A DNA stretch of 64,000 nt from assembly GCA_030704615.1 (NCBI GenBank), contig CM060732.1, positions 10,788,001 through 10,852,000 of the forward strand, written 5' to 3'. A program made the position numbers and the translations under genes. Under the pieces are notes generated by a model, which saw only the letters and a program-made list of their open reading frames with translations, did not search any database and was not told the DNA's origin. The stretch is from Takakia lepidozioides (lineage: Eukaryota > Plantae > Bryophyta). Of the stretch, positions 3,169 through 55,869 are shown piece after piece. Numbering within the stretch: the first letter of the stretch is position 1; the number at the start of each line of letters is the position of its first letter.

Positions 3169-5460
3169 TCACCAGTAATCACCACAAGAACCCATCTTCA
3201 AAGTGCTGGAAAGTAGTTAGCGTCCCATACAACAATTGCTCGGCCAACAATCTCTGAGATGAATTTGGTGGAGGTGTGGCAGTCTCCACACACTCGAAGA
3301 TTCTTGATAAGTCGTGCTGATCAGCCCAAAACCAATGGCCAGCTTCTCACTGTGGTGGCAAAGAGAAAATTCCTTTCCTCCATATCATGCAATAAAGAGC
3401 GTGTGTCAGGCACATACCCCGCCTCCTTCATCTGCCCAGACAATCTTCTCAGCTCCGCATGGATTTCCTTAATTCTGGGATGCAACTTGTCCCTGTGACC
3501 TTCATCATTCTTCTCACCTTTGCAGTATCCCCACCTGCCAGCTGCAGCATAGAGTTTGATATAGCAACACATAAGTCGCGACATCCTGTAAATCCCACTT
3601 GAGGATAGATGTTGCCACAGCCATCTCCACATTGCCATGGATTCTGCAGGCACCAAGCAAGGCCTTCCACACCACAACATCTGGATTGATTGGCATTTTA
3701 TTAATCAGGTCCACTGCCTCATGTAGTTGGCCCGCGCGTCCAGAAGGTCCACCATGAAGCCAAAGTGTTTTACTGGCGGGGTGACACCATGATCTTGACT
3801 CAGGGAATCGAAGTAGCGTCTTCCTTCATTCAGTAGGTCAGTGTGGCTGCATGCAGAGAGAACACATATAAAGGTGATACTGATGTGGTTGCACTTCACC
3901 CCTTCCCCCATCATATGCTCATAGGTCTCCAAGGCCTCCATTGTGCATATCCTGCAAGCATGGCGTTCCATGACACCAAATCTCGTTCAGCCATACTGTT
4001 GAACACTCCTTCCGCATCCTCAATGCTCCCACATTTGGCATACATGTCCACGAGTGTATTGTTCAGGATCACATCTGCTACAATTCCAGCTTTGGCGATG
4101 CAACCATGCACCTCTTTGCCCTTTTCCAGGGCTGCCAGGCTTGTACACGCACTGTAAACGCACACAAATGTGATGTGGTTGGGCTTCACCCCTTCCCCCA
4201 TCATTTGCTCATAGGTCTCCAAAGCCTCCATCCCACACCCTGCAAGCATTGCGTTCCACGACACCACATCTCATTCAGCCATAGTGTTGAAATTAACTCC
4301 CTTCGCATCCTTAATGCACCCACATTTGGCATACATGTCCACCGGGGTAGTGTTCAGGATGACATCTAGTACAATTCCAGCTTTGATGATGTCACCATGG
4401 ACCTCTTTCCCCTTTTCCAGAGCTCCCAGGCTTGCACACGCATTGCAAACACAAACAAATGTGACGTGGTTGGTTTTCACCCCTTCGCACATCATTTGCT
4501 CATAGGTCTCCCAAGCCTCCATCCTGCGCCCTTGGTGTGCATATCCTGCAATCATCGCACTCCACGACACCACATCTCGTTCAGCCATACTGTCGAACAC
4601 TCCCTTCATACATGTCCACAAGGGTATTGTTCAGAATGACATTTGGTACAACTGCAGCTCTGACCATGTCGCCATGGACCTCTTTGCCCTTTTCCAGAGC
4701 TGCCAGGATTGCACACGCATTGCAAATGCACAGAAACGTGATGTGGTCGGGCTTCACCCCTTCCCCCATCATTTGATCATAGGTCTCCAAAGCCTCCATA
4801 CCACGTCCCTGCTGTGGATACCCTGCAAGCATCGTGTTCCATGACACCACATCTCGTTCAGCCATAGAGTTGAAAACTCCCTTCGCATCCTTAATGCACC
4901 CACATTTGGCATACATGTCCACCAGGGTAGTGTTCACAATGACATCTGGTACAATTCCAGCTTTGACGATGTCATCATGGACCTCTTTCCCCTTTTCCAG
5001 GGCTCCCAGGCTTGCACACGCATTGCAAACACAAATGAACGTGATGTTAGGTCGAAGAAGAAGGTGCCCTCACCAAATTGGCCTTGACCTTGTGGCATGA
5101 CCCATGGAGGATTTGACCACCCATGCTTGGTAAATCCTGCCAACATTATATTCCACGTGATCAAAGATCGTTGAGGCATTCTGTTGAACACTTGGTGAGC
5201 ATCCATGATGCTCATGCACTTAACATACATGTTGACAAGGGTGTTGAGTAGAAAAACATTTGGCGTCCACTTTGGATAATGTGAGTGTGCATCTGCTTTC
5301 CAGCTTCAAGGCCTTCCATCTTGATGCACTTATGCAAGAGACAGACATAAAATTTGCTGAAATGCCTCCTTGCAGGTTTAAAGTCTGTAGAGCCTCTTTC
5401 ATTCTGCCTGCCTCACAAAGCATCTTCACATGCCCAGAAGGCATTGTGGACTCCCTCTCT
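3169..5460 (-). pseudogene. PLS-E-DYW pentatricopeptide RNA-editing factor with many frameshifts
   Basis: Repeated DMYAKCG/VVSWN motifs; E domain VVWKALLGACRIHGN; [23 protein letters not shown] and terminal DYW-stop at 3169-3180. Confidence 0.93.
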
Positions 5461-18300: not shown

Positions 18301-20997
18301 CACCCCCCCCACCACCACCACTCACTTGCTACTTTAAGGTGCTTTCAGATATGATTTCTATCTAGTGATGACATATATAACAGTTGTTAAGCCGTTTCAG
18401 CCTGGTATTCCATAGCTTGACACTAACTATGATCGTGTGTGCATAACTATGATGAAACTAGGTGAGGCGGCTTCACTTTCTTTAGATGGTAAATATACAA
18501 GAAAGACTAAGTGGGCAAGGAAGAACTGAGGGCTGGCTTGGCTGCTTGGTAGGATATGGACCTACAGCATTGCTGGTCCACGGTTAAGTTTTTGAACGTT
18601 CTCAGACAACCATATGACCTTGTTCAAAAGGAAATCATGCATGAGCTGAATTCTATGCTATGACTTGACTGGATCTTGGACTAGATAATAGTTCAAAATC
18701 TGGTTTCTATGATCCTGTGGTTTAGGAATTACTCATAAGACTTTGTTTGCCATAGCCTTGTGGCCATAGATCCTGCGCCCAGTTTGGACAGAAACATAGG
18801 GAATAGGCACTACCTTTGTGAGGGGCTCACTCCAGGAGTGTGACTTACCTTGATATCACCTAAACAAATAGAAAAGTTAGACCCCCACAGGGTCAGGGCT
18901 TTAGGCTCAGCCTCGAGATTCTGTGGTTTAGGGAATGACATATAGAGATCTAATGTTGAAATGGCTGAACATGGGTCAGGTGTACGACATCTCCAAACTG
19001 TTCAGGAACTAGATCTAAATGATCTAGAACCTTACTAGTCTTGACATGACTAAACAACACTCCTCTATTTTGGGTCTAGGGCCACACGGCTACAGAAAAC
19101 AACCTCACATGAGTACATTCTCTCTCTTGTCTTCATTGCTGATACTAGATGAACGAGGTAAAATCAAGAGAAAGACAAAAAGTAAGAAACTTGAGCAACT
19201 TACAGAGCATACAGCTCTACAGACAGCCCTCAAGCTGCAGATGATTAAGAGAGACACATGAAGAAGGTGGGGAGGGGAGGAGTGACCTGCGTCAGACGCA
19301 AGGTACAAACAGGCCATAGCAATATCCCACTTGTCACCCAAGTTGCCCAAGGGCACCGACTCATATCCCTTGACCCCAGCTTCTTCTGGTGCCAGCTTGT
19401 TCATGCCCGGGGTGTCAGCAATAGGGCCAGGTGCAATCCCATTAGTTCGAATGCCATAGTCTGTTCCCCACTCCAGAGCCAAACTTCTAGTGATGCTGTC
19501 TATGGCTGCCTGCACAGTTGCAACCAGCTGGTTCTGTTCAGATACAAATAACGTACCCTGCTAAAAAAGAACATCAATTCAAAAAAATGTGCTACTGAAT
19601 ATGAAGACTGAGAGGCATTGTCAATAGTCAACCAGCCCAGTTTTAAGTAGCTGTGTGTATGTGTGTGTGTGTGAGAGAGAGAGAATGTACTCATAAGACG
19701 TTGCTTACCGTAGCCTTCTGGCCGTAAACCCTGCGCACAGTTTGGGCTGAACGAAAGGGAGCAGAAACTACCTTTGTGAGGGGCTCACTCCGGTAGTGTG
19801 ACTTACCTTGATAAAGACAATTAGATTGGGTTTTCCAGATATCCTCTAGAAAGCCCTTCACACAAGCATCAACTTGCTGTGTGTGAGCCACCCAGCAATT
19901 ACACCCCAAGAGGGCCAGGGCTTTAGGCTCAGCCTCAAGTGTGTGTGAGAGAGAGAGAGAGTCAAAATTGTCATGTGGATGATGGAAATCAGAATGTGGC
20001 CACTGTCATCCCTGGAGGTAATGGGTAGACATTCCCATGTGAAGAAAATTGACTTCTTCATAATCTTAATTTGTGCGAGGTTCAGATGATATTGGAAAGA
20101 GGGGCAGTGACAGTTATCTGATGCTCTTGGTCAGCTCTTAAAAATACCCACTGCACTCCATCAGAGCAAAAGAAATCTGAGACAGGCAAAGAGAGAGACA
20201 GAGAGAGACCTTAGCTGCCGATACGTGAATCTGGTACCACTGCGCTGAGTATTGAAAAGTCGTGCTTATGTTTATGATAATCCCACTCTCCGAGGAACCC
20301 TTCCCTTTTCCTCCCCTCTTCAGATAATGCACGGCCGCATGGCACATGGTGAATGTGCCCAACGTATCGATATCCATAACTGTCAAACGAAACGTTAGAT
20401 ACAGAAAAATCAGTACCTAGAACAGGGCAGAAGCGAAAACTCATGATGACATGGACGGATAGCCACGCTAAGAAAAGAAAGAAAACAGAAAAACCAAGTC
20501 TCACTTATGAACTCTACCTGAATTTGTCTGCTTTTGCTTGGTGGTCGATAGGCACCTAGAGAGTCTTGCCTGTTTTGAAACCATTAGGAGAGAGATCTTC
20601 AGGTGCAGTCAAAAAGTTGCCAGCAGCGCCATTGACGAGAATATCAAGTCTTCCGAGCTGCTCAATCACTGTGTCTACTACTCGGGCGGCGTCCTCCTTC
20701 TTCCGAACGTCTCCTTCCACCCCTAGGGCCTGCTCGACACCCATCCTCAACCACTAAGGAATTTTCCCTCACTCCGACTCCTGCTACATCAAAATCGTTA
20801 GAATTCACCTCAATACCGAGGGCTCCAAGCTTGATAACGGCCGCATCCAACACTTGCTTCCTCCGTCCCATGATAGCAACCTTGGCTCCATGAAGGCCAA
20901 ATTGCGTAGCAATTTCAAGTCCAATACCTGACCCTCCACCTGTATGCAGCGCCACTTTTCCTATCAAAACTGTTGATCGGAATGGTGATACCTCCAT
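12317..20997 (-). CDS. DECR2: Peroxisomal 2,4-dienoyl-CoA reductase (SDR). Exons 20997-20809, 20729-20570, 20379-20210, 19509-19287, then last exon 13028-12880 or 12477-12317
   Basis: TGGGSGIG, NGAAGNF, WYQIHVSAAK, LALEWG motifs; exon phases add up; both last exons end SKM-stop (PTS1); intron 2 needs a GC donor. Confidence 0.92.
13154..14024 (+). mobile_element. 5'-truncated LINE (RTE/RTEX-like) with 16-bp TSD
   Basis: TSD ATCTTATGTCGAGAAA at 13138-13153 and 14025-14040; CCHC motif CPLCGQSEDSIHFLIHC; ends TGAGTACA. Confidence 0.88.
14503..16989 (-). mobile_element. Longer decayed copy of the same LINE (APE end, RT, CCHC)
   Basis: SDHF at the 5' break; FLDVKKAYD, GVAQGCTFSPLLFN, MFADD; TSD AGGGAGAGAGA at 14492-14502 and 16990-17000. 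Confidence 0.92.
18730..19130. mobile_element. Two short 3'-end relics of the same LINE (18730-18920 minus; ~19070-19125 plus)
   Basis: Match the family 3' end; the plus copy ends ATGAGTACATTCTCTCTC. Confidence 0.65.
19685..19938 (-). mobile_element. LINE 3' fragment in a (GT)n(GA)n microsatellite
   Basis: VDACVKGFLEDIWKT; flanking direct repeat GTGTGTGTGAGAGAGAGAGA at 19665-19684 and 19939-19958. Confidence 0.85.
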
Positions 20998-21049
20998 GTT
21001 ACCTCTCTCTCTCTCTCCGATTGATGCAGACCCGATTAGTTTGTCTATA

Positions 21050-21150
21050 TCACGGTAAGTCCCACTACTGGAGTGAGAGCCCCTCACAAAGGTAGTGTCT
21101 GTTCCCTTGTGTTGCCACAAGCTACAGCAAACAATGTCTTATGAGTACAT
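21050..21150 (+). mobile_element. LINE 3' relic just upstream of the reductase start codon
   Basis: GAGTGAGAGCCCCTCACAAAGGTAG...AAACAATGTCTTATGAGTACATTTTCTCTC. Confidence 0.7.
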
Positions 21151-22337
21151 TTTCTCTCCCTCTGCCAGTTGCTCTCTTTCCTTTACAATCAATCAAGAGA
21201 AGCAACTCATACTCTCTCCCAATGCCAATCCGAAGGTTTCTCTGACGACCCACCAAAGAGGACAGAGGAAAGAACAACAAAAACTTAGCGTGGTGGAGTG
21301 AGCCATCGCCCAACTAGAACGGGGCTAGGCACTCGGCTAGCGCCTGGTGCCGGGCCCCTCATTTCAGGAATGCCCCCGTCCTGGGGCCTCACCCTACACA
21401 ACACTCGTGGGCCCGCCTTTCCCTTTCCCTCTCCGTTGCCGTGCCTGTTTTGTTGCTGACTTGCTTTTTGTCACTTTCTAAGAGGGGCCACTTTATGGAA
21501 GCAGCTGTCCACATCATTTTTGGCCGCTCCTTTCGGTCATCCTACATCCTACCTCTTACAGCTTTTTTACATATTCCATTTATAAAAATACGGATGGAAT
21601 CATTCATCTGCACCTGTCTTAGATTAATACGTTCTGTTAGAAATTGGTCATGAGAAAATCATCACACATATTTGCAAGTGGGGCCCTAATTCCTATTTGT
21701 TAGTTAAAAAATTCCGAACTAAGGCATGGACTCGTTGCAAGTGGATTACCTGTTTCTTGTGTTGATCTGGAAAGGTTTACATGTGCAAGTCACTGGGTGC
21801 GGTATTCATTGGGTATTCATCATTTATCAAAAACTGTGTTGCCCCGTGGACACGATCCAAATGCTACATAGAATTCCAGCGCCTCTCCATCTTATCCCCT
21901 GGCCTTCCCTTGGTCCTCAAGGGGAAAGCACCCTAATCTGTGCTGGCAATGCTTGAGCTGTCTCAAAGGAGGGAGATGCAACCTCCAACATGGGTACTTG
22001 ATCCTCAACCTGTGCAATTCAAGCGCATCTTTTACAGTTCATGCATTGAAGCCCAGAAATGGATTGGATAGTATTTTCAAATAGCTAGAGATATCACTGT
22101 CTCACTTGAGGGAGTTGAGTTTGTGTGCATTACATGAAAATAGCCTTGAAGCAGCATCTCTCAACTGCGGCCAGGTATCTCTGGTGGTCACAGCCATTCT
22201 ACAAGCCAATGCTTCCCCCTTCTTGGGCCCCCTCATAAGCCTTGTGAGGACAATCTGATCTTACCTCGGTCTGGGCACTACCGTCTGTGTCTATGTTACT
22301 TTTTCCAGATGGTCTCGTCTCAGCCTGTGCAGACAAA

Positions 22338-25300
22338 CTAGGGGATCTCCATCTGTCGCCTCACAAGGTCTTCTACTCGTTCTAGTGTAACACGCTGTCG
22401 GCCGCCCCGTGGTTTCAACTGGAACTCAATGTCTGCAGCTTCAAAGTCCCCCTACATCAACCAGTGAAACACATCACTATGAGGATCACAACTGAAGATA
22501 TGTTGAGAAATATGGGTCCATGATATCAGTATAAGAACTTTTGAGGACAACTGCAATGGACAGGCCACCAGAAACACAATTTGAAAACCACCACCATAAC
22601 TTGTAGGCTTTATCATTTCAACAAATATGAATCTACCATAGTCTCCAGCTTTGATAGAAGCTAGAGTTTGACCATGTTCAATAGAACTTCACCTGTTTGA
22701 AGAAGCCTAGACTCAATATGAATTGGGATGATGTCTTAGGGTCAATTGCCAGGCATTTCGTTTCTCATGCAATTTAGCTGAGCAGTTATGGAATATATCA
22801 CTAATTGACTTTGGATAACTGTACATATACAGGTTTCATATGATACCAACTTCAGGACTTTTCATGTTTATCACGCACGGCTTTATAGGCAAAGCGCTTG
22901 CCACAGTCTGTGTGAGAGCAGACATATGGCTTCAGTTCCAGATGCACGGCCCTTATGTGCTGGTCCAGGTTGGATTTCTGATAAGCACCACCAACAAATC
23001 CCTATGCACTTTACATAAGAATCTCAGTCACCCTTTTGGGGATGCCTGCAGCAAAGATGACCTATACAGTAGGTCCCAGAAAGACCGAAAACAGTGTGAT
23101 TTAACGACATGTTAACCACAATAATCCAGTCCAAACTTAAGTGAGGTCATCTAAAAAACCTTTGAAAATGTGAGCAAGTAGCATTCCAAATGAATATTTG
23201 CTTACACACACTTTGGTGAAATCATTTACACATTCTTCTGCAAGTTCGGGTGATGCATGTCCTGCTGCTCAGGCTTGGTCTATGTTGTTTCCATTGGCTA
23301 TATCCAAAAAGAAGGTTCCATTGGCCAGGGATTCCAGTTGATGCTACTTTATCCACTTTCAAAGTCTTATTGTTGAGCCTGCATTCACTCTAAGGATCAG
23401 CCCTGCTCTGAATGCAAGGAACATCCATCTAGATGTACTTGCTCATGCACACAAGAGGCTCGTGCTGGTGCCACAGATTGGATAAGTCTTGCCCTTGAAC
23501 ATTTACAGAATGTTCTGAGAGCTTCTGGCAGGTGTTGGCACATTTCTACCTTCTTCATTAAAATCTTTTAATATTTTAATATTTAACCTAAAGATTCTCT
23601 TCAAAAGATCGCAAACCACCTATACATCACAATAAACAAGGGAGCACCATAAAACATACCATGGAGTAACTGAATATGCAGCCAGAGTAGGTGCATTGGA
23701 ACAAGGGCGGTTTCTCATCATGCTTAAAAAGGTGCTGCTTTAACTGGTTCTTCGACATGGATGCCCCACAGATGTCACATACTACACAGCTATGTGAAAC
23801 TCTTGTGTGAGCTCTCAATGTAGTGAGGCATTGAAATATCTCTCCACATCCAGGCTCCATACATGCTACTGCTTTGTACTCAATGGGCACCACTCCTGGT
23901 CACAATACAACCTGCACACTTAGCATAGTAACAAAGGCTATTCTGAAGTGATCACAATCCCTACAACGAACCTGCACAATTAGCAACATAACTAAGGCTA
24001 CTGTGCAGGGCAAACGGGTGAGTTCTGTAATAATAGCCTGTTCCTATCCAACAACAACTAAAAGGCCCTACAGTCCATTCGAACCATTTACTATTGGTAA
24101 GAGCTAAAAAGATTCCAATTTCAAGATCTTGAATCAGAGGCTCTCTCATTGTATGAGAGTTGTTCTGCAATCCCCTATGCCCCATAAGAAATAAGAGACT
24201 TTCAAAACCTTCAGTGGAGTTCCTCCTCTTGGTTCAGAAAAGCAATGTGTTTTAAAAACTGTAGTTGCAGGCCATGGTTGCATGCCCAATGTGTGTCAAA
24301 ATCTTGAAGACATCTGTTGCATTCATCTGTGACTATCACTAGTGTCAGAAGCATCACTTGTAACCCCATCTCCAATTGTACAGAGGTATTGCTCTAAAAT
24401 GGATACAAGTTAGCTGCAGATGATGTTCCAATCAGTTCTACAAAAACCATCATTGAAACAGTGTCAAAAACTACTGCACATTTGAGTAAGTGTACCTGTA
24501 TATTCCATCTAGAGACAGAACGTTGGCTGTAGATTTTTCAGTGGATGCAGCACCGGGACTTCCCAGGAGGTCACCCACCCCAGTACTATTCCGGCCCAAA
24601 GACGCTAAACTTCAGAGTTCTGATGGGATCTGGTGTAGTAGCCTTGGTATGACCGCATCACTCCCATCTACAAAGTGATCATTGAATGCAAACCTGAATA
24701 GTGATAGATGTACTTTGCATTGCAGAGGACTAAATGAAACCAAGTTTCAGTAATCCACTCCAATACAAAAGAAAGACTGGTCAGCTTTGGTCAAGAGAAC
24801 ATTTTCATTGCCTTATGGATGTTTGGGAATCAGAAGTACAAATAAGGCAAGCTGTCTGGTCTACCCACCCACAAAGAAAAAGAAAAGCAGATAAGAAGTA
24901 CCCTGATCTTGGACTGACTTAGCGAGGGAGACACTCCAAAGCTACTGCACCGATCTATATCTACAACTAGACGTGATCCAGCATGCGATTGAAAGATGGC
25001 GTCCTGCATGTAAATATCCATATCATGGCAAACGACTAATTGAGAAGGGTGAAACATTGTGATAAGGTCAAGAGTGAGCATCCACAGTACGATAAGGCAG
25101 GAGCCAGACTTAAAGTAAATGACTAGCAAAATGACTGACAGCTTACTATGGACATTCTCTTTGTGAGTCCGCAAGAGGGACGGATAGCGAAAGGTTTTGC
25201 CGCAGCCGGGCTCGCAACACTCTAGATTTCCGTCTGATGCTCGCCTTTTACGACCACCCCCTAGTCTCCATTTCTTGTGCGCCTTGAGGTGTCTCTGCAG

Positions 25301-25440
25301 GTTTGCCTTAATTGTGAATGAAATCTTGCAACCCTCTACTGGGCACAAGAAGATTTTCCCCTGATGGGTAAATAGGTGGCGGTTGAGGTGATCTTGCCGT
25401 TTGTATGCTCTGCACCGGCCATGGAGCATTCAAAGGGTCC
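22338..25440 (-). pseudogene. TFIIIA: TFIIIA homologue, damaged or N-truncated. Exons 25440-25147, 23895-23660, 22977-~22820, 22451-22338
   Basis: YKRQDHLNRHLFTHQGKIFLCP, FRYPSLL, SNLDQHIRAVH, FAYKAVRDKHE and GDF...PRGG follow plant TFIIIA. Frameshift in the first visible finger; TGA at 22852-22854; fingers 1-2 not found. Confidence 0.85.
24542..24660 (-). ncRNA. Full-length (119 nt) 5S rRNA copy in a TFIIIA intron; candidate 5S-mimic cassette exon (24496 to 24667 or 24693)
   Basis: Minus strand TGATGCGGTCATACCAAGGCTACTACACCAGATCCCATCAGAACTCTG...GGGTGACCTCCTGGGAAGTCCCGGTGCTGCATCCA; no oligo-T terminator; flanked by AG and GT sites. Confidence 0.93.
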
Positions 25441-25719
25441 CTGCATCTGAAATACTAAGTATAAACATTATATTTTCAAGGTTGCTGATGGAGCACTACA
25501 CCAAACAGCTGTCTGCACTTGAAAGACATAATATGAGAAATCACCACAACTCAGTACCTTCACAGCTTGCTCAATCCAAATCGGCGTCTGAAGGAGAATG
25601 CCAGTCGACTTGAAAAGAGATCTCTGGTGTCGGGAATATACATTTACGCCCTAAACCCTTGAAGGGGGAAGCGCCTCCCTACTTTAGATACGTAACAAAA
25701 AGGGTGGGGCGGCGCCTGT

Positions 25720-25728
25720 AAACCCTAA
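25720..25728 (+). promoter_or_regulatory. Telo-box AAACCCTAA upstream of the TFIIIA-like gene
   Basis: Exact motif ~280 bp upstream of the first recognisable exon; typical of ribosome-biogenesis promoters but short. Confidence 0.35.
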
Positions 25729-26311
25729 TATCTGTCCAATGCGCTTCAACTTTTATATCCTTGTCGTTGAGCTCCGGAGGAGCATTTGGGTTCTGTATGA
25801 ACACTTTGGTCTTTACCATTTCACTGTTAAACGATGGGTGCTGGAGAGAACTTAGTACGCAGATCTATTAAGTTGGAAACCTCCAGCAGCAAACTCTTGG
25901 ACAATGCCAAACTTGTGGGTTTTTTCATGTCTCAAAGAATTCACAGCTGAATTGTTGAAGAGATGAAGGGAGTGAGAGGTTAGAACTGATCCTCATCGAT
26001 CACAATGCCGCCAGCTGCTCGACTTCACACGAGTGAACACAAAGACCATCAAATTGCAGCCTGCACTCAACCCCTGTTATTGGCCATTGTGGTCCATGTT
26101 CAAAGATCACACAGAGCCAGATGAAAATAACCTGCGATGAGTTCACCTCCCCAATGTGTGTCTCAATTTAGGGCTCAAACCCTCTCATGTGCTGCAGAAA
26201 TATTCAGAGCGGCAGACCCCAGAGATGGTGTCTGTGCCTTATGATATGCACTGTAAATGCGTGACTTCGACACTACTGTACACTAAGCAAACATACTGAG
26301 GTTGAAATACT

Positions 26312-28074
26312 AGGCCCGCGCACATGCACTTTTGCAAACTCCCGTTCGCCTGGCGAATTCGCCACTGGCGGGCCCCACGTCAAGGGAGCGGGGCGAAGGG
26401 CCGTACCCGGCACATGCAGCAAACGGTTGGTGGCCCTGTCGTTTTTTTCCCTTTTGGAGTTGGTTTTTACCAGTGTTGGCCGGGCATGGCATCTAGACAT
26501 GCATATCCGGCGGTTATTTGCCGGTTATACACATATCCATAACCGGAGCCCCCCAGGAACCGGTTATGGAAAAGAACTGGCAAAAGCCAGTGAGCTTCCT
26601 AACCGGTTCCATAACCGGCAAAGCTAGTGAGCTTCCTAACCGGCGAGTTTGGGTAGCGTGTGAGCATGCTCATGTGAGCACAAGGGCATATTCCTCGAAT
26701 TTCCACGAAATTTCCACAGCGAAACGAACTTGGCAAAATTAAACATTATGCGAAACTAACACATGAAGAACAAGTAGCCCTTATACCTAATGAACATATT
26801 ACCCTATAGGCGTGGTTTTCTCCATAACAGGCGCGAGAGTGTGCATTGAGATTTCACCTCAAATTGTAGGTCCTCGCCCATAGCTAATTTCTCACAGGAA
26901 CAATCTGTACCAAATAGCCTGAGAAGAAATCACACTGAAGGATAACTTCGCACAGCGAAAGTTTGTACCAACCAGCCTGAATTGGATGTGGGATTGTTGG
27001 GTGATGGGATTTCGTATAGAAAGTTTCGACTCAAGCTATATCAGTAAGGGTTTCTCAATGCGAAACCCACCGTTGCATAGGTTTGTGCCCATATCACCAA
27101 GTCTTTCTCAAATACTAGTTAAGGGTTTCTCTATGCGAAACCCACCGTTGCATAGGTTTGTGCCCATATCACAAAATACCAGTAAGGGTTTCTCAATGCG
27201 AAACCCACCGTTGCATAGGTTTGTGGTCATATCACCAAGTAGCAGTAAGGGTTTCTCAATGTGAAACCCACTGCTGTATAGGTTTGTGTCCATATCACCA
27301 AGTACTAATAAGGGTTTCCCAATGCGAAACCCACTGCTGTATAGGTTTGTGTCCATATCACCAAGTACTAATAAGGGTTTCCCAATGCGAAACCCACTGC
27401 TGTATAGGTTTGTGCCCATGTCACCAAGTATTTCTCAAATATCAGTAAGGGTTTCTCAATGCGAAACCCACCGCTGCATAGGTTTGTGCCCATATCACCA
27501 AGTCTTTCTCAATGCGAAACTCATCGCTGCCATAAGTTTAAGTTAGGGTTTCTTGCTACACTACTAAAGTTTCCGCCTCGCTGAATTGGTGCAGATGTAC
27601 CATATATATGCACCGATCATCTATACCCGCTTATGATTTTTTCCGTTTTGGAAACTATAACTCCAATGACCGAGGTTAAAAAAATATAAAACTCCCATGA
27701 CCGTGGGTTGTGCTCACGCGATACCAACCCCCCTAACCGGCTAGAGAACCGACATCATGATTGTAAGGGTGTTATACCCGGAGCAAGATCCGGAGCAAAT
27801 GTGGATGGCGTAGAGGCGGTTCTAGATAATACGGTGTAAGGGTTGGTGATGGTAGCTAAGAACATGACAATGGAGAGATCATGAGTGGAATGTTATGTCT
27901 TACTACTAACAATACGCTTACAATGGTTGGGGAGATTAGGTGTACAACATTGAGAATGTCGAAGTAGAGAGGAAATTAATTAGTTGGACATTTGGCTAAA
28001 ACAATAGTTGTAAGTTGTAAGCGTATTACATGGGCAGAGCTCCCAGCCTGAAGGCAGAGAGATAGATGACAGGT
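26312..28074. mobile_element. Probable DNA-transposon end segment, possibly the left part of the Harbinger that continues after 57018
   Basis: Abrupt start GGCCCGCGCACATGCAC after CTA; ACCGG-rich repeats also present at 57.1-57.35 kb; other end not seen. Confidence 0.35.
27043..27520. repeat. Minisatellite, ~7 copies of a 63-75 bp unit
   Basis: AAGGGTTTCTCAATGCGAAACCCAC...ATAGGTTTGTG.CCATATCACCA repeated. Confidence 0.9.
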
Positions 28075-28269
28075 GTTGAAATCCCGGTTATCAGCGTCAC
28101 GTCCATCCGTCAGCGTCAGGTCACGTCAGACCTGACGCTGACGGGACCTCCGTCACGTCAGGTTCGGGGAATATTCTGATAAAAATAGTATCAGGTAAAA
28201 TACTGCCACTTAAGCAGCCACGTCGCCGACACAGTGGCAGTGACAAATACATTTTGAAAATTAACAAAA

Positions 28270-29390
28270 TGAACACGACCGCCAATTCGCTTTGTTTTTT
28301 CGAAATTAAAAAAGAAATAGCGACCGCCGTATTGACGGTCGCTTCAATTTTTATTTTTTTTAAAGCAAGATTGGCGGTCGCACTAGCGGTCGCCTTATTT
28401 TTCGAAATAGAAAAAGAAATAGCGACCGTCATATTGGCGGTCGCTTCAAATGTTTTTTTTTTCAAAGCAAGATCGGCGGTCGCACTGGCAGTCGCCTTAT
28501 TTTTTGAATTAAAAAAACAAATAGCGCCGCTTTGTTGGCGGTCGCTTCAATTTATTTTTAAAAAAAACAAGATTGGCAGTCGTATTGGCGGTCACCTAAT
28601 TTAGAAAAGAAAACAAGTGACTGCCGTATTGGCGGTCGCACTGTGGCAAATACATTTTTGAAAATTAACAAAATGAACACGACTGCCAATTATGGCGGTC
28701 ACTTTGTTTTTCGAAATTAAAAAAGAAATAGCGACCGTCGTATTGGCGGTCGCTTCAATTTTTATTTTTTTAAAAGCAAGATTGGCGGTCGCCTTATTTT
28801 TCGAAATAGAAAAATAGCGACCGCCATATTGGCGGTCGCTTCAAATGTTTTTTTTTAAAAGCAAGATTGGCGATCGCACTGGCGGTCGCCTTATTTTTCG
28901 AATTAAAAAAACAAATAGCGACCGCTATGCTGGCGGTCGCTTTCAATTTATTGTTTTAAAAAAACAAGATTGGCGATCGTATTGGCGGTCGCCTAATTTT
29001 AAAAAGAAAACAAGCGATTGCCGTATTGGCGGTCGTACGGTGGCAAATATATTTTTGAAAATTAACAAAATGAACACGACCGCCAATTATGGCGGTCGCT
29101 TTGTTTTTCGAAATTAAAAAAGAAATAGCGACCGCCGTATTGGCGGTCGCTTCAATTGTTTTTTTTAAAAGCAAGATTGGCGGTCGCACTGGCGGTCGCT
29201 TTATTTTTCGAATTAAAAAAAGAAATAGCGACCGCTATCTTGGCGGTCGCTTAAATTTAAAAATATACAAAATAGAAATGATCGCAATATTGCACAAAAT
29301 GAAAGGAAATAAAAGCGACCGCAGTAGTGGCGGTCGATTGTTTTTCATTAAAAAAAAAATACGGACCGTAGTATTAGTGGTCGCTTAATT
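28270..29390. repeat. Left subterminal array of GCGACCGCC-N6-GGCGGTCGC palindromes in A/T tracts
   Basis: Directly visible; includes a higher-order repeat starting TTTTGAAAATTAACAAAATGAACACG at ~28252, 28656, 29052. Confidence 0.9.
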
Positions 29391-29818
29391 TCAAAATTAC
29401 AACAAATATGGTTGTACAGTCTTTTTTGGGTGGGCGCTATAGGTTCGTCATTTATTCATTTCACTTTCATTTCACTTTCATCCCTCTTGGATCATATATA
29501 AAGGAGGAGGGTCACCAAGCTCCTCACTTCTTTTGGCGCAAACACTTGAGGTAGCTTTAGATGTTCTCTTCCATTGAACGAGAGTGTAGCCAAGAGGAGG
29601 GTGCGCACCTTTTGTCGTTGTGGCTTCCACCAAAGCCACTTCAGCAGATTGTGTATAAGCTCAACACTACAACTCACATCGACCCACTTGGGTTGCTGAC
29701 ATGTGTAGAAGTGTTGGGCTATCGCATTGCACTCTACATTCACAACACGTTCATTTATAGGTGACTGTTTTTTGTTGCTTGCGTCGCTAGGTCACAGGGG
29801 AGTGGATATTGGGTGAAG

Positions 29819-32800
29819 ATGATGGAGGAATGGAGCCCTTGGTATACGGCAATCCCGAACACTATCAGTGCCACTAGTAGTGTTGAGTACAACCTATGTG
29901 GATTAAAGCTTTCTTATCGTAAGGATCGGTTGCTCGCTCACCTCAGTTATAAAGGTGTGAAGAGCGCTGGGGTAAAAAACCATTTTGCCCAGTGTGGAGG
30001 CAATATTCCAATGTCTTTGGATCTGGACATGACCTCTGAGCAGAACACTCCATCTTCCCGTCAAGATGCCCTGATTAGTACCCATGGCGACTCTTGTGAG
30101 GCTTCGGGTGTCCTTGGATAAGTGGGTTGTGCCGGAGCAACACCTGCTTCAACACCTCTTTGTACCCCTACACTTCAATGGAGTAGAGGATTATGGCAGC
30201 AATCCATGCAAGAAAATCTTAACTTGTCTGCAAAAAGACAGTTGGATAAAAAATAGGAGCAGTTTTTCTTCAAGGCCAACATACCATTTAATGTGGCAAG
30301 ACTTCCGGCATTTGTTTCTGCTGTTAGAGCAACCTTGGAGTCCAGATCCACGTACGTGCCTCCGACTTATCACAATCTCCACACAGGATTGCTAGAAGAC
30401 GCCATGACCGAGCTTACCCAAAGGGTCAACGATAGGACGGGCGAGTGCATCAGAAAATATGGAAGCACTATATGTGCCGATGGTTGGAGTTCTGTCACAA
30501 ACATACCGTTATTCAATGTCATGCTCATATGTCCAGCTGGGGAACAATTCTTGGGATCGGTCGACACTAGCGGCGAGAAGAAATATGGACGTTATCAATG
30601 CCAACTATTGACGGACTTCATCGAACAGGTCGGAAGTATAGAATCGTGCAAATATGCACAGACAATGCCGCTAACATGATAAACACTGCAGACATGTTGT
30701 TGGCACATTATCCCCATATGTACTATCAAGGTTGTGCTGCTCATATCTTTGACCTCCTTTTGGAAGATTGGGGAAAAGAACAGTGGGTGAAACAACTTGT
30801 CAAGCGAGCGAAGATTGTTGTGTCGTTCATCTACACACACCACATCCCTTTGGCAATATATAGGAGACTTCAACCCAAATACAGCTTCCGCAATCCAGAC
30901 GAAACTCGTTTTGCCACTAACTTCTTGATGGTGGATCGATTGGTGACGGTGAAAAGCAGTCTGGAGCACACCATCATCGATCCTCAATAGGATGCGTACA
31001 CACGGACATTGCGGGACTCCAGAAAAACCAAGTCATTGGGCAAAAGTCGAAAAGTTTGAAATAGCATTCGCAGCGATGATTTCTGGAAGAAATGTGAAAA
31101 CTTTGTTTATATGGTTGAGCCGGTGTTAATCGTCTTGTGGGAGTTTGATGGAAAGTAACTAGTAATGGGCAAGGCATGGTTACTAATGCAAAATCTTGAT
31201 AAGCACGTCCAATCCTTGAGGCATCCTCCCTTCCCTTCTTTTTGGAACCTGAACTTGCGACAGTGCTGAGGATGCATTTTACGACCGTCGGTCGATGGTT
31301 TCAACGGACTTGCATTATGCGGGGGTTTTGCTCAATCCATTCTTGCTCAACAATACCATGCTCCGAGACGACGCTGATGCCAAGGCCGGCCGAGTGCGAG
31401 TGCTCATACGACTGGCTCCGCCGAACCATGCAGAGAGAGCTATATCCGAGTACCAATGCTTCTCAAATCGCTGCGACCATTTTGAGGACATGTCGGATCC
31501 AAAAGAGCTCAATATGCTGCCACATGAATGGTGGGGTCTGATTGGAGCTGGAGCAGGAACATTGGCTCCCATTGCGAAGCGTATTCTTGCTCAAGTGTGC
31601 TCTGCCTCATCTTGCGAACGCAATTGGAGCAGTTACTCATTTGTTCACAACAAGATTCGCAAACAGGTTTGAATCCCGCGAGGGCTGACAAATTGGTGTA
31701 TGTGTATACCAATTGCCGACTGCTACGTGAGATGTCAGCGAATGATACTGCAACATGGTATGAGAGGAATTTGCATTCCGAAGACTCTGCTTCTGAGGCT
31801 AATTCGATGAGTGACGATACAGAGCCTCAGAGAGAATCATTTCAGAGGGAATCATCTGCCTCCGATAGTGAAGATGGATCCGATGATGCTCCCTCCCGAA
31901 AATGCGTATGACCCGTTTACATTCACAGATGATGATGTTTATATCCAGCCGACCTTTGATGACCTTCTTGAAGAAGTGCGTATCGCAGATGAAGGTGAAG
32001 CTGCAATTGTGTCATCCCCAGAACATGGTCCTCAAAATGAAGTTGGGATCGACCCTCGCCCCCCACTACACGCTAAAGCCACCGGTAGTGCCCCAATGAA
32101 GCTTAGGGGTGATGTACTGCCAGGACCGATCGACGTACGCAACCCTATTCATACAAATGATGGTGTCAAACCCATTGTACAGTCGACGGGACGAGATCAT
32201 GCCTCACCGATACGACCAGCTCCACCACAATGCCAAAACCGATCCAGCTCCCCATCAACACAGCGGGCATTAAGGAGCAACAAGGTTGATCTGTTTTCCA
32301 CACGCATGCATCATTCTGCTGCATTGAACCGGGCGGAAGTTGAAGCCTTGGATGATGACAACTTGCTACTACAATTCCACCTTAACCAACGTGTTGCGCA
32401 GCAGACCCGTGGTTCCTCACAGGCCGGACCATCTAATGTCGGTCCATCTCGGGCAGTCCCCCCTCCGGTACCTCCTTCGAGACCACCTTCGATTGCGTCC
32501 CAAGTCCATAAACGACAGAGAACAGTCCAACATTTTGTAAGCGATCGGCCCACAAACAGACCAGATACCGTGGATGATATTCAAGACCGGAGCGGGAGTC
32601 GACCTCAGATAGAACTAAATGTGGTTCGAGGTCGCTTGCAGATTCAAGGCCTGGACATATGAGGTCGGATAGGGAGGATGATTCCAGCACTGATCATGGC
32701 AACGGTGGTGAAGTTGAGGGTGACCCGGATTTTCAACCCATCGGAGCATTAGGATTAGGATCTTCTTCATCCCGCCGTCGAAGCAGTAGAAGGAATTGAA
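29819..32800 (+). pseudogene. hAT transposase (degenerate BED finger, DUF659-type region, dimerisation domain) with low-complexity C-terminal extension
   Basis: ANIPFNVA, STICADGW, QICTDNAANM, CAAHIFDLLLED, TRFATNF, SASSCERNWS, ADKLVYVYTN; stops and frameshifts. Confidence 0.92.
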
Positions 32801-33072: not shown

Positions 33073-34545
33073 AGCGACCGCCAAGGTGGCGGTCGCTTCT
33101 ACGAAGTGTGACCTACGCATGGAGCGAGGAATGAGGCGGGGGGAGGGGGGCATATAAGCACCGGGACATTCTCCCCTCACTTCGCTTGAAGTTTTTTTTT
33201 TTTTTTAATAAATGCAGTGACCGCCATTTGTGGCAGTCCTTTTTTTTTTTCTTAAACGGAACGACCGCCATGGTGGCGGTCGCTTCTACGAGGTCGGCCT
33301 GCGCGTGGAGCGAGGAATGAGGGGGGGGAGGGGGGGGGGGGGCATATAAGCCCCCAATCATTCTCCCCTCATTTCCATTACGGCGAGTTTTATTTTTACA
33401 GAATGCAGCAACCGCCATTTCTGGCGGTCGCTGTGATGGTTATTTTTTAAGATGCAGCAACCGCCACTACTGGCGGTCGTTTTTATTTTTTTATTTTTGG
33501 AAATGGGACGACCGCCATTACTGGTGGTCGTTTTTTATTTAAATTATTTTGGAAATGAAGCGACCGCCTATGTTGGCGGTCGCTTATTTATTTTAAATGT
33601 TTTGAAAATGAAGCGACCGCCTATGCTGGCGGTCGCTTTTTTATTTTAAATGTTTTGAAAATGAAGCGAACGCCTATGCTGGCGGTCGCTTATTTATTTT
33701 AAATGTTTTGCTTATTTATTTTATTTATTTATTAAATGAAACGTTGGCGGTCGCTTATTTTTTTTAAAGTTTTTGAAAATGAAGCGACCGCCTATGTTGG
33801 CGGTCGCTTATTTATTTAAAATGTTTTGAAAATGAAGCGACCGCCTATGCTGGCGGTCGCTTGTTTTTTTTTATTTTTTTTAAATGAAGCGACCGCCTAT
33901 GTTGGCGGTCGCTTATTTTTTATTTTTTTTAAATGAAGCGACCGCCTACGTTGGCGGTCGCTTATTTTTTTTAAGTTTTTGAAAATGAAGCGATCGCCTA
34001 TGTTGGCGGTCGCTTATTTATTTTAAATGTTTTGAAAATGAAGCGACCGCCTATGCTGGCGGTCGTTTTTTTTTTTTTTTTTAAAAGTTTTTGAAAATGA
34101 AGCGACCACCTATGTTGGCGGTCGCTTTATATTTTTAAATGTTTTGAAAATGAAGCGATCGCCTATGCTGGCGATCGCTTATTTTTTATTTATTTTTTAA
34201 ATGAAGTGACCGCCTATGCTGGCGGTCGCTTATTTTTTTTAATTTTTTTAAAATGATGCGACCGCCTATGTTGGCGGTCGCTTATTTATTCTAAATGTTT
34301 TGAAAATAAAGCGACCGCCAATGCTGGCGGTCGCTTATTTTTTTATTTATTTTTAAATGAAGCGACCGCCTATGTTGGCGGTCGTTTTTTTTGTTTTTTT
34401 TCCCGGGAAATGGAGCGACCGCCTGTTCTGGTTTTTTTTTTTTTTTTTTTTTTCCCGGAAAATGGAGCGACCGCCAGTTCTGGCGGTCGCTTATTTTTTT
34501 ATTTTCCGGAAAATCGAGCGACCGCCAAGTTGGTGGTCGCTTCTA
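33073..34545. repeat. Internal array of ~20-25 AAGCGACCGCC-N6-GGCGGTCGCTT hairpins at ~50-55 bp period
   Basis: Directly visible; same motif as at 28.3-29.4 kb and 56.4-56.8 kb. Confidence 0.92.
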
Positions 34546-34883
34546 GAAATGAGGGCGGGGGGGATATAAGCCAAGGGAGGCTTATTCTCCCCTCACTTTC
34601 TCTCTACACAACTTCTGTGTGCGTGTCATTTCATTATTCCACGACACGTAATCACGTGGAGAAGGAGGCCATTGGTTGGGTGGGGGATTTTTTTGCCGCG
34701 ATTTCTGTGAGGTCGTTGCAAAATGCTCTCATAGGCCCTCCTCTGGCTTCCAGGATCATTTTATTCTACAAAATTAGCTTTTAGAAAGTATTTTGACACC
34801 TACTCAAACCTACTTAACAGGGGAAGGGTTTAGAGTTACGTCTTTTAGAAAACCTCGTTTAGTGTTGCTCCGATTGTTGTAGA

Positions 34884-54161: not shown

Positions 54162-55869
54162 TTATTCCGTCCTATATACGTCTTTCGGCTCAGGCCAATT
54201 GAATGGCTTGCCCATGAACCGAAGTACTACATAGGCTAATGTGACTCTCTCATTCTTGTTGTTTTCGTACAACCTTTGTAGCATTGAATGCCAACAACCT
54301 CCCGTAAATTGGTCCTGGAACATACTTTGATCATAATGAACGCCGCCATTTATTCGTACCGCTATCTTCCCAACGGCAAAGGCCTCCGACGTCATGTCCT
54401 AGGGGGGGGGCGTAGCATAACCGATGCAATATCTTTTTCCACCCACCATCTTTTTGCGAGTTCCCGGTCCAGCTTGTCTTGGTTTTCAAATTGGTACGGC
54501 GAGGCTTTGCGTATGCCCAATGGGGTGGCTAAGCCCCAATCACACACCCCAATCTTGATCTCCTCGGTGCCATCTGGAAAATGCAACAAGATGTTGTCGG
54601 GGAACAAGTCGTTGTGCAGGACACCGTTCTTGTTGACAACATCCATGATGTACACCAGTGCCCATGCAAGTTTACTGCGCACTTTCCGGAACGAAGCAAG
54701 CGATCGCATTCCTGGAACTCTGCTTCCGTTCCTCTTTGTTCCAAAATCACCCTGTTGTCCGAATCGTTGCCCCATTTTCTATCAAGGTTCATCATGTCGG
54801 GTATTGTCCCCCCATTCCACTAGTGAGTGTAACCCTCTATCTCACGTGCATTCACAGCAAAATACGAGATAACACCCGGATGCTAGAACTTCACTGCCAA
54901 ACGCTCGTCGTTATGTTGTCTCAACGTCTTTTCTGGATTTTTGGACTTGGGTTTTTTTCCCGCTAGCTCCCAACGTTCCGATATTCTAGAATCGCCAACA
55001 ATCCTACAGTGACGGACCTTAGCATCCCCTCCTTCTTTGTAAGGGCCAATCTCTACCACCTTCGCACTAGAGTTCAGGTAATAAAGACCAGTTGTGCTTC
55101 CCCCGCCCGATGACCCTGCCTTCCAAGGGACAACCCTAGTCCGGCGATGCGATAAAAACTTATGGATACACCTAGTTTTGTTCAACAACTCACAGGTAAC
55201 TTCGCGAAGGAAAACCCAGTCCTCTCGTACTATGGTTGACTTCTCGCAATTCTCTCTTAAACACCAACGGTAGATAGGAACCCATTTGGTAGAAACAGAA
55301 TATTTACTATCTCCACTCCGCACTTGGCTACCCAGCGTCTACCGTGGGCACGATAACTGGTACACTAGAGGTATGTTTTTCCCGGTCCTCTCGTACTAGG
55401 GAAAGGTCCTCTCAATGCTCTAATTTTGACTTGCCGAGCAAGCCCAATACTCAACACGCCGCATTAACTCGGCTTCGGCGGAGGGCACTCGACCCTCGGT
55501 TGTTCTACCCTTCCATGTCTTCATTAGCTGCCTCAAATTCCACGTGACGTCTTTCGCCCTGCTTTGGATCCACTGATTGAACTTCGGCTTGTCCTTGTCC
55601 GCCGTCCACTTAGCCCCCGCCAGTGCGTTTGTCATTTCCCTCTCCATATTTTGCTGGAAAATCTGAAACCCCTCCTATCCATGCCTAATATAAGCACTCT
55701 CCAGCCTCATCATGTCCCTACCCTTGAAATAATCCGCTACCACTTCTTTCACCCTATCCAAGGCATCCGGTCCCGGGTAGTCTGGCTTGTTGACCTGACT
55801 ATCCCGCTCGTGGGCACGTTTTCTCTTCCTCGATCCCGCCCCAGAACTTGAATTCACAACCCCCGACAT
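54162..55869 (-). pseudogene. Protein kinase gene (hAT cargo) with premature stops and frameshifts
   Basis: EGGDAKV G-loop, LAGKKPK, HPGVI, WNGGT, LHNDLFPDNILLHF catalytic loop, GVCDWG. Confidence 0.85.
55312..55423 (-). pseudogene. rrn23: Plastid-type 23S rRNA fragment spanning the sarcin-ricin loop
   Basis: TTAGAGCATTGAGAGGACCTTTCCCTAGTACGAGAGGACCGGG...GTGTACCAGTTATCGTGCCCACGGTAGACGCTGGGTAGCCAAGTGCGGAG matches recalled chloroplast 23S domain VI. Confidence 0.88.

What the first reader, a model, noticed from the sequence alone, without database searches (positions are those of the whole stretch)
24496..24693. Near-intact 5S rRNA copy in a candidate poison exon of TFIIIA, apparently in a non-canonical intron
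Seen: a full 119-nt sense 5S copy between AG acceptors (24693 or 24667) and a GT donor (24496); inclusion by either acceptor gives a premature stop; there is no oligo-T terminator. Known: land-plant TFIIIA is autoregulated by an exonised 5S mimic (P5SM) bound by ribosomal protein L5; in angiosperms it is diverged and lies after finger 2. Here it is almost unmodified and follows the finger equivalent to ZF5. Inference: an ancestral-state or independently evolved 5S-sensing splicing switch.
Basis: partly seen in the sequence, partly recalled or inferred. Interest (0 to 1): 0.85.

Follow-up and report, generated by a model that had tools for sequence, protein, structure and literature searches.

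The report
5S rRNA poison exon in TFIIIA
A nearly unchanged copy of 5S ribosomal RNA is spliced into the messenger RNA of the plant's own 5S transcription factor (TFIIIA) as a stop-carrying exon; this is the known plant 5S feedback switch, but it sits in a different intron from the one used in other mosses, liverworts and flowering plants, and in a partly broken copy of the gene.

Summary
A full-length sense 5S copy lies at 24542-24660 (minus strand; Rfam 103 bits) in the intron after the fifth zinc finger of a moss-like TFIIIA gene.

- **Splicing:** Contigs from two RNA-like runs (two studies) show GT..AG splicing 25147>24667 and 24496>23895. It is therefore a real 172-nt cassette exon, with an in-frame TGA at 24614-24612. 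Only the 24667 acceptor is seen, not 24693.
- **Near-intact:** High-depth 5S rDNA contigs of the same organism differ from the copy at three listed places, none of which breaks a consensus pair.
- **Position:** Physcomitrium, Ceratodon, Marchantia, Riccia, Calypogeia and carrot carry their 5S mimic in the ZF2|ZF3 intron. Selaginella carries it in the ZF5|ZF6 intron, as here.
This copy is damaged. It lacks the first half of ZF2, has a 1-nt frameshift in ZF3, and has lost its ZF9 exon donor, so that exon is skipped. At least one other copy exists. Its junction contigs show the same 5S exon both included and skipped.
The scan flagged the same feature on another piece of this genome (s1-488628).

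Verdict: a positional variant of the known P5SM/L5 switch. L5 response and NMD are untested.

The parts
24542..24660 (-). Full-length sense copy of 5S rRNA (119 nt).
   Evidence: Rfam RF00001 scores 103.3 bits over model positions 1-120. Own model R1 scores 122.9 bits. The copy differs from the organism's high-depth 5S rDNA contigs at 24578, 24602 and 24607 only, among the listed places. None of these three changes breaks a consensus pair.
24496..24667 (-). The 172-nt cassette (poison) exon as spliced in RNA contigs. It consists of 7 nt of flank, the 5S copy, and 46 nt of 3' flank.
   Evidence: GT..AG joints 25147>24667 and 24496>23895 appear in runs X5 and X6 and are absent from DNA runs X1 and X4.
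24612..24614 (-). Premature TGA stop in the included form. It lies in the loop C / helix III part of the 5S.
   Evidence: Local translation of the contig-supported exons gives an ORF that ends ...ENVHNGSDAVIPRLLHQIPSEL*.
24668..24693 (-). Extension of the exon if the upstream AG (24695-24694) were used. It would stop at the TAG at 24670-24668.
   Evidence: Read from the sequence. No RNA joint at this acceptor was listed.
24506..24508 (-). ATG in the exon's 3' flank, in frame with the ZF6 exon. It could serve as a re-initiation start for a C-terminal protein.
   Evidence: Local ORF MEYTGVVPIEYKAVACMEPGCG.... This is inference only.
25147..25446 (-). Exon encoding ZF3, ZF4, a spacer and ZF5. One base is missing in ZF3 near 25414-25416.
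   Evidence: tblastn to the Physcomitrium protein gives 58% identity. Exon ends come from the RNA joints. The frameshift is present in DNA contig 25283-26192 and in RNA contig 25277-25448, both with 0 differences.
23660..23895 (-). Exon encoding ZF6, ZF7 and the first half of ZF8.
   Evidence: tblastn. RNA joints lie at 23895 and 23660.
22855..22990 (-). Exon for the second half of ZF8 and for ZF9. It lacks its last ~22-24 nt and its donor, and a TGA follows HEKS. Transcripts of this copy skip it.
   Evidence: tblastn. The joint 23660>22451 skips it in X5 and X6. An mRNA contig from another copy carries 22 extra letters that read ...HEKSGLHRPPSQGDFEAAD.
22123..22451 (-). Last exon: the conserved C-terminal tail (GDFEAADIEFQLKPRGGRQR...) and the 3' UTR.
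   Evidence: tblastn. RNA contig 22123-22450 and its joint.
25558..26289 (-). 5' exon as seen in RNA contigs. It holds only a remnant of the second half of ZF2 (25949-25895, ...SAVNSLRHEKTHK) and no first half.
   Evidence: RNA contig 25558-26289 and the joint 25558>25446. Frame translation. No ZF1 or ZF2 hit by tblastn.
24505..24525 (-). Downstream copy of a possible target-site duplication. The upstream copy lies at 24664-24684.
   Evidence: A direct repeat with 15 of 21 positions matching; its core is TAGATGG on the minus strand. It could be chance.

Best explanation
The element is a 5S-rRNA-derived cassette exon of TFIIIA. It is the same kind of device as the known plant 5S rRNA mimic (P5SM), but it lies in the intron between the ZF5 and ZF6 exons and is built from an almost unaltered 5S sequence.

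Shown here:
- The 172-nt exon (24667-24496) is spliced into mRNA.
- It brings an in-frame TGA more than 110 nt upstream of the next exon junction.
- Skipping it restores the reading frame.
- At least one other TFIIIA copy in the same organism carries the same exon start, and its junctions occur both with and without the exon.

Inferred by analogy with P5SM:
- The folded 5S mimic in the pre-mRNA binds ribosomal protein L5 (uL18). The helix III / loop C site is intact. Because loop E and helices IV-V are also intact, TFIIIA itself may bind as well.
- The acceptor lies only 7 nt upstream of helix I. A bound protein would therefore favour exon skipping and the productive mRNA.
- When free 5S rRNA soaks up L5, the exon is included and the message is truncated or decays.

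The copy in this window is a 5'-truncated, partly degenerate paralogue. It has no first half of ZF2, a frameshift in ZF3, and it skips the ZF8b-ZF9 exon. It still keeps a 210-codon ORF covering ZF4-ZF7 and the C-terminal tail.

The insert most likely arose by retroposition of mature 5S RNA.
For: - **Identity of the copy:** Rfam 5S at 103.3 bits, full length, sense strand.
- **Host gene:** TFIIIA, closest to moss proteins. Identity to Physcomitrium is 60, 50 and 69% per exon, against 28-57% for liverworts and Selaginella. Xenopus TFIIIA is the best solved-structure match.
- **Splicing:** GT..AG joints 25147>24667, 24496>23895, 25558>25446 and 23660>22451 appear in X5 and X6, which come from two studies, and in neither DNA run.
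- **Expression of this copy:** RNA depth carries the copy-specific letters at 24578, 24602 and 24607. It is about 15 in X5 and about 5 in X6, matching the joint depths.
- **Other copy:** Variant junctions that carry G instead of A at the exon end (24668/25148 and 23896/25148) show another copy with the exon both included and skipped.
- **Reading frame:** The premature stop and the restored frame come from local translation.
- **Structure:** The three differences from the genuine 5S leave every consensus pair intact.
- **Literature:** Land-plant TFIIIA retains a 5S-mimic exon that gives a premature stop after two fingers, and RPL5 binding promotes its removal (PMC6164485).
- **Other lineages:** 5S-like elements lie inside TFIIIA introns of eight other plants.
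Against: - **No functional tests:** No binding, NMD or dosage experiment exists for this exon.
- **Data limits:** The RNA evidence consists of assembled contigs, which cannot give isoform ratios.
- **Skipped form:** No skipped junction with the window copy's own letter was listed.
- **Gene state:** The window copy is damaged, so its exon could simply be a relic.
- **Age:** With three differences in 119 nt, conservation of the 5S part cannot be told apart from youth. About six differences would be expected at half the ~10% divergence between copies, which is not a significant shortfall.
- **Selaginella:** The Selaginella match is weak by Rfam (21 bits, E 0.04).
Confidence: 0.62

Rival explanations
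1. Neutral exonisation. A retroposed 5S pseudogene landed by chance in an intron of a decaying TFIIIA duplicate, and nearby cryptic splice sites pick it up. The exon has no regulatory role.
For: - The window copy has at least three disabling lesions.
- The genome is reported to hold 5S-headed SINEs, so 5S retroposition occurs there. RNA contigs with 5S nt 1-47 fused to unrelated sequence fit this.
- The copy is only about 2.5% diverged from the genuine 5S, which fits a young insert.
- A possible target-site duplication flanks it.
Against: - The same exon start, including 7 nt of non-5S flank, is spliced in another copy that also gives the skipped, productive form. The insert therefore predates the duplication, while the flanking intron has diverged by about 10% plus indels.
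- A sense 5S copy becoming a stop-carrying cassette exon in exactly the gene known to be regulated this way is very unlikely by chance.
- Selaginella has a 5S-like exon in the same intron.
Confidence: 0.2
2. Ancestral second site. Early land plants had 5S mimics in both the ZF2|ZF3 and the ZF5|ZF6 introns. Lineages kept one or the other. The near-identity to 5S seen here is maintained by gene conversion from 5S rDNA or by strong selection.
For: - Selaginella and this moss-like organism share the intron and the sense orientation.
- The ZF5|ZF6 intron has the same phase-1 position across land plants, as shown by the H|G read-through in many fragments.
Against: - Five other bryophytes have no trace of an element in that intron, which is 110-300 nt long in them.
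- The window copy is 57% identical to the Selaginella element but about 97% identical to its own 5S.
- The acceptor sits differently relative to the 5S in the two species.
Confidence: 0.13
3. The copy is an active Pol III 5S gene, or part of a Cassandra-type element, that merely lies within an intron.
For: The internal control region is intact, by its near-identity to the genuine 5S.
Against: - No oligo-T follows the 3' end, and the upstream flank is unlike the rDNA spacers. The loose ends at 24661 show that homology stops exactly at the 5S ends.
- There is only one 5S in the 64 kb, so no LTR pair exists.
- RNA contigs join it to TFIIIA exons.
Confidence: 0.05

Closest known systems
P5SM, the plant 5S rRNA mimic or '5S-derived suicide exon' of TFIIIA (Hammond, Wachter and Breaker 2009; Fu et al. 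2009). Neither primary paper could be read here; both are cited from memory and through PMC6164485 and PMC3378873.
   Same: - It is a sense 5S-derived structured element inside the TFIIIA pre-mRNA.
- It is a cassette exon whose inclusion gives a premature stop and whose skipping gives the full reading frame.
- The L5-binding helix III / loop C region is conserved.
   Different: - It lies in the ZF5|ZF6 intron, not the ZF2|ZF3 intron.
- It is about 97% identical to the organism's own 5S and scores 103 bits. The moss mimics at the usual site score 40 bits, and the carrot one is not detected by the Rfam 5S model.
- The stop would come after four or five fingers rather than two.
- L5 dependence has not been tested.
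Selaginella moellendorffii TFIIIA 5S-like exon (L009:3100-3279).
   Same: It occupies the same intron (after ZF5) in the same orientation. It has a stop codon in frame. No 5S mimic lies in the ZF2|ZF3 intron, which is only 50 nt long there.
   Different: - It is strongly diverged from 5S: Rfam 21 bits, and 57% identity to the window copy.
- Its 5S-like part begins at the acceptor itself.
- It has a partly duplicated helix IV segment.
Bryophyte mimics at the usual site (Physcomitrium L001:3906-4022, Ceratodon L008:2965-3084, Marchantia L010:3548-3671, Riccia L002:3708-3831, Calypogeia L003:3951-4069 and 4103-4221).
   Same: They lie in the same gene, in sense orientation, with the same conserved loop C core. 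The Calypogeia copies are also close to intact 5S (86 and 88 bits).
   Different: All lie between the ZF2 and ZF3 exons. The two moss mimics are 88% identical to each other but only 64-65% identical to the window copy.
5S-headed SINEs (SINE3 type) and LINE-mediated 5S retrocopies.
   Same: The source RNA is the same, the genome is reported to hold such elements, and a possible target-site duplication is present.
   Different: The copy is a complete 5S rather than a truncated head. No LINE tail was recognised. It is used as an exon.

Membership tests
P5SM / 5S-derived suicide exon of plant TFIIIA | Lies within the TFIIIA pre-mRNA in sense orientation. | tested here: met
   The minus-strand 5S lies between minus-strand TFIIIA exons.
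P5SM / 5S-derived suicide exon of plant TFIIIA | Has a 5S-like fold with a conserved helix III / loop C (the L5 site). | tested here: met
   Full-length Rfam 5S alignment at 103 bits. The loop C core is invariant across eight plant elements.
P5SM / 5S-derived suicide exon of plant TFIIIA | Is a cassette exon: inclusion gives a premature stop and skipping gives the productive frame. | tested here: met
   Inclusion joints appear in two RNA-like runs, and the stop is at 24614-24612. A skipped junction was seen only with the other copy's letter.
P5SM / 5S-derived suicide exon of plant TFIIIA | Is positioned between the exons for ZF2 and ZF3. | tested here: not met
   It lies between the ZF5 and ZF6 exons. 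No 5S-like remnant was found upstream of ZF3.
P5SM / 5S-derived suicide exon of plant TFIIIA | L5 (uL18) binding promotes exon skipping, and the included form is NMD-sensitive. | not testable with these tools
   This needs binding assays, minigenes and RNA-seq under an NMD block.
TFIIIA | Has a tandem C2H2 finger array in the conserved order, with the plant C-terminal GDF...RGGRKR tail. | tested here: inconclusive
   ZF3-ZF9 and the tail are recognisable, and named TFIIIA proteins are the best relatives. This copy, however, lacks the first half of ZF2, is frameshifted in ZF3, and skips the ZF8b-ZF9 exon.
Pol III 5S rRNA gene | Has an oligo-T terminator right after the gene and sits in rDNA spacer context. 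| tested here: not met
   No T-run follows the 3' end. Homology with the rDNA contigs ends at the 5S borders.
Cassandra TRIM | Has two LTRs, each with a 5S-like segment. | tested here: not met
   There is a single 5S-like element in the 64 kb.
5S-headed SINE (SINE3 type) | Has a truncated 5S head, a LINE-derived tail and a target-site duplication. | tested here: inconclusive
   The copy is a full 5S and no LINE tail was recognised. A 15/21 direct repeat flanks the insert.

The most novel reading that the evidence does not exclude
The 5S-sensing exon of TFIIIA is not one ancient invention. It has been re-seeded. In this moss lineage a fresh retrocopy of mature 5S RNA was exonised in the ZF5|ZF6 intron and replaced the old ZF2|ZF3 mimic, converging on the intron that Selaginella uses. 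Because the new mimic keeps loop E and helices IV-V, TFIIIA itself could bind its own pre-mRNA alongside L5, giving a direct second feedback arm.
Probability: 0.3. Interest if true: 0.8.

Novelty: new variant of a known kind. Interest (0 to 1): 0.6.

Why it matters
P5SM is the textbook case of a structured RNA that controls splicing in plants, and it is usually described as a single ancient exonisation at one site.

Here, a spliced, almost unmodified 5S copy sits in another intron of a moss TFIIIA. The usual site lacks a mimic in this gene copy, and a lycophyte has its mimic in the same alternative intron. Together these make it testable whether this feedback device turns over and re-evolves.

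It also offers a natural 'young' mimic for asking two questions. Which 5S features are needed for L5-dependent exon skipping? And can TFIIIA bind its own message?

Tried and rejected
- **Primary papers:** Fu et al. 2009 and Hammond et al. 2009 are not held. I could not check whether they already recorded the Selaginella intron position.
- **Assembly error:** I considered this as the cause of the ZF3 frameshift and the missing ZF9 donor. It is rejected, because DNA and RNA contigs match the window exactly at those places.
- **Remnant of the usual ZF2|ZF3 mimic in this copy:** None was found by Rfam at E<=10, nhmmer, blastn against moss introns, or model R1 with filters off.
- **Close relatives:** A third protein search with the 94-aa exon found no candidates. 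The metagenome scans by protein and by a 23-nt exon-flank pattern found nothing.
- **ENA contigs L005-L007 and JGI contig L011:** These hold TFIIIA-like exons but no 5S-like element.
- **Cassandra TRIM and an active Pol III gene:** Both rejected (see rivals).
- **MFE folding of the whole exon:** The z-score was unremarkable at -0.36. Thermodynamic folding does not recover the 5S fold; the covariance model does.
- **Spliced model:** It was only translated locally.

Full report
**1. The observation**

Rfam's 5S model matches window 24542-24660 on the minus strand end to end, at 103.3 bits and E 1.6e-21. It is the only 5S-like element in the window by four searches: Rfam at the gathering score, Rfam at E<=10, an nhmmer profile, and my own covariance model with filters off.

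Read on the minus strand, an AG at 24669-24668 lies 7 nt upstream of the 5S 5' end. A second AG lies at 24695-24694. A GT at 24495-24494 lies 46 nt downstream of the 5S 3' end. No T-run follows the 5S.

**2. The host gene**

Minus-strand exons encode C2H2 fingers. tblastn with plant TFIIIA proteins maps four exons:
- ZF3-spacer-ZF5 to 25446-25147
- ZF6-ZF8a to 23895-23660
- ZF8b-ZF9 to about 22990-22855
- the GDF...RGGR tail to 22451 and downstream

The best relatives are named TFIIIA, and the closest is Physcomitrium patens. Per-exon identity to the two mosses is 49-72%. It is 28-57% for liverworts and Selaginella. Xenopus TFIIIA is the best solved-structure match.

The organism's name is coded. 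On this evidence it is a moss or close to one. In the nine-finger numbering of angiosperms, the finger before the 5S intron is ZF5. Bryophyte proteins lack angiosperm ZF1, so it is their fourth finger.

**3. RNA evidence**

I laid four runs on 21900-26880. Two are RNA-like contig sets from two studies (X5, X6). The other two are DNA contig sets from the likely source sample (X1, X4).

X5 and X6 show joints with GT..AG ends on the minus strand that the DNA runs do not show:
- 25147>24667
- 24496>23895
- 25558>25446
- 23660>22451

The 5S copy is therefore part of a 172-nt exon, 24667-24496, which is spliced between the ZF5 and ZF6 exons. Only the 24667 acceptor is seen.

RNA contigs also carry the letters specific to this copy at 24578, 24602 and 24607. 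Their depths are close to the joint depths.

Local translation of the contig-supported exons gives ...ENVHNGSDAVIPRLLHQIPSEL and then TGA at 24614-24612 in the included form. The skipped form gives an open frame. The stop lies more than 110 nt upstream of the next junction, which is the usual condition for nonsense-mediated decay (established knowledge, not tested here).

**4. How intact is the copy?**

In the DNA runs the 5S stretch is covered at depths of thousands to tens of thousands, which is the rDNA. Nearly all of that depth differs from the window at three listed places: 24578, 24602 and 24607. On the RNA strand these are U54 for A, U59 for C, and G83 for A. Two are unpaired positions. 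The third turns a G-C pair into G-U. No consensus pair is lost.

Differences near the ends could be hidden by the tool's listing rules, so three is a minimum. Homology with the rDNA contigs stops at the 5S borders. This fits the insertion of a mature 5S RNA copy rather than a piece of the rDNA array.

A 15/21 direct repeat (24664-24684 and 24505-24525) may be a target-site duplication. Earlier notes report 5S-headed SINEs in this genome, and RNA contigs with 5S nt 1-47 joined to unrelated sequence fit them. Retroposition is thus a plausible origin, but it is not shown.

**5. This gene copy is damaged, and it is not the only copy**

Four points show the damage:
- No exon for the first half of ZF2 was found. 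Only ...SAVNSLRHEKTHK remains (25949-25895), inside a long 5' exon that RNA contigs cover continuously from 26289 to 25558.
- One base is missing in ZF3 near 25414-25416. PFECSMAG and CRAYKRQDHLNRH therefore lie in different frames.
- The ZF9 exon ends ...HEKS followed by TGA, with no donor.
- RNA from this copy skips that exon, which happens to keep the frame.

DNA and RNA contigs match the window exactly at these places, so they are not assembly errors. What remains is a 210-codon ORF from the ATG at 25429, covering ZF4-ZF7 and the tail.

Variant contigs at roughly equal DNA depth point to two further copies. One mRNA contig from another copy reads HEKSGLHRPPSQGDFEAAD across the place where the window copy is broken. 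Another is net four letters longer across the ZF3 region, which would restore the frame.

Junction contigs with G instead of A at the end of the ZF5 exon join to the same 5S exon start (24668/25148). In X6 they also join directly to the ZF6 exon (23896/25148). So another copy has the same exon, both included and skipped. The earlier first-stage note s1-488628 reports the same feature on another piece of this genome. I could not read that locus.

**6. Comparison with other plants**

I fetched TFIIIA loci and mapped both exons and 5S-like elements.

| Species | Locus and position of the 5S-like element | Score | Intron |
|---|---|---|---|
| Physcomitrium | L001:3906-4022 | Rfam 40.5 bits | ZF2\|ZF3 |
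| Ceratodon | L008:2965-3084 | Rfam 39.7 bits | ZF2\|ZF3 |
| Marchantia | L010:3548-3671 | Rfam 59.9 bits | ZF2\|ZF3 |
| Riccia | L002:3708-3831 | Rfam 62 bits | ZF2\|ZF3 |
| Calypogeia (two tandem copies) | L003:3951-4069 and 4103-4221 | Rfam 86 and 88 bits | ZF2\|ZF3 |
| Carrot (partial match) | L004:4035-4074 | own model R1, 31 bits | ZF2\|ZF3 |
| Selaginella | L009:3100-3279 | Rfam 21 bits, E 0.04 on 281 nt | ZF5\|ZF6 |

The ZF2|ZF3 position agrees with the literature: the mimic gives a stop after the first two fingers, and RPL5 binding promotes its removal (PMC6164485). None of these species has a second element in the ZF5|ZF6 intron.

Selaginella differs. Its ZF2|ZF3 intron is only 50 nt. 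A clearly 5S-like cassette with an in-frame stop lies in the ZF5|ZF6 intron. The best Rfam family for that stretch is 5S, over the full model. The alternative intron is therefore not unique to this window. I could not check whether the 2009 papers already said so.

**7. Reading**

The device works like P5SM, and I file it as a positional, near-intact variant of that kind. One defining feature of the family as usually described, the ZF2|ZF3 position, is not met.

The window copy is 64-65% identical to the two moss mimics at the usual site and 57% identical to the Selaginella element. It is about 97% identical to its own 5S. Together with the absence of any remnant at the usual site in this copy, this favours a later insertion, or a refreshed copy, over simple retention of an ancient element.

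The insert predates the duplication of the gene copies, whose introns differ by about 10% plus indels. Three changes in 119 nt is too few to prove selection.

The steps 'L5 binds', 'binding causes skipping' and 'included form decays' are inference from the known system.

**8. Limits**

- All read evidence comes from assembled contigs. No isoform ratios can be given, and absence of a joint proves nothing.
- The organism's name is coded.
- The other gene copies were seen only as variants.
- The spliced model was translated locally only and was never sent to a search tool.

Noticed in passing
L009:3100-3279 (Selaginella moellendorffii TFIIIA locus): A 5S-like cassette exon candidate lies in the ZF5|ZF6 intron. 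The ZF2|ZF3 intron is only 50 nt and holds no mimic. A partly duplicated helix IV segment follows the element.
   Followed up: partly
L003:3951-4069 and 4103-4221 (Calypogeia fissa TFIIIA locus): Two tandem 5S-like copies (86 and 88 bits) lie in the ZF2|ZF3 intron. They are only 75% identical to each other.
   Followed up: partly
window 24614 and 24654 (loose ends in runs X5 and X6): Some RNA contigs hold 5S nt 1-47 joined to unrelated sequence. Another has a different upstream flank joined to 5S nt 7 onward. These are probably 5S-headed SINE transcripts or further 5S-like loci.
   Followed up: no
window 55283-55417 (-): A fragment matches bacterial-type large-subunit rRNA (65.5 bits, model positions 2660-2810). 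It is probably an organelle-derived insert.
   Followed up: no
window 26400-26880, 27000-27500, 28100-29400, 33100-34550: These are high-copy repeats (DNA contig depth in the thousands) and tandem arrays upstream of the TFIIIA copy. The transcript's 5' exon ends next to them.
   Followed up: no
window 30293-30990 (+): ORFs with motifs resembling a hAT-type transposase (…CADGWSS…).
   Followed up: no
window 19105-21120 (-): Neighbouring intron-containing gene for a short-chain dehydrogenase/reductase-like protein. Its exons look intact.
   Followed up: no
L006:2254-2556 and L007:280-582 (ENA metagenome contigs): Copies of the TFIIIA ZF3-ZF5 exon with an in-frame stop. No other TFIIIA exon lies within 4 kb, so these are likely pseudogene fragments of an unidentified plant.
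   Followed up: no
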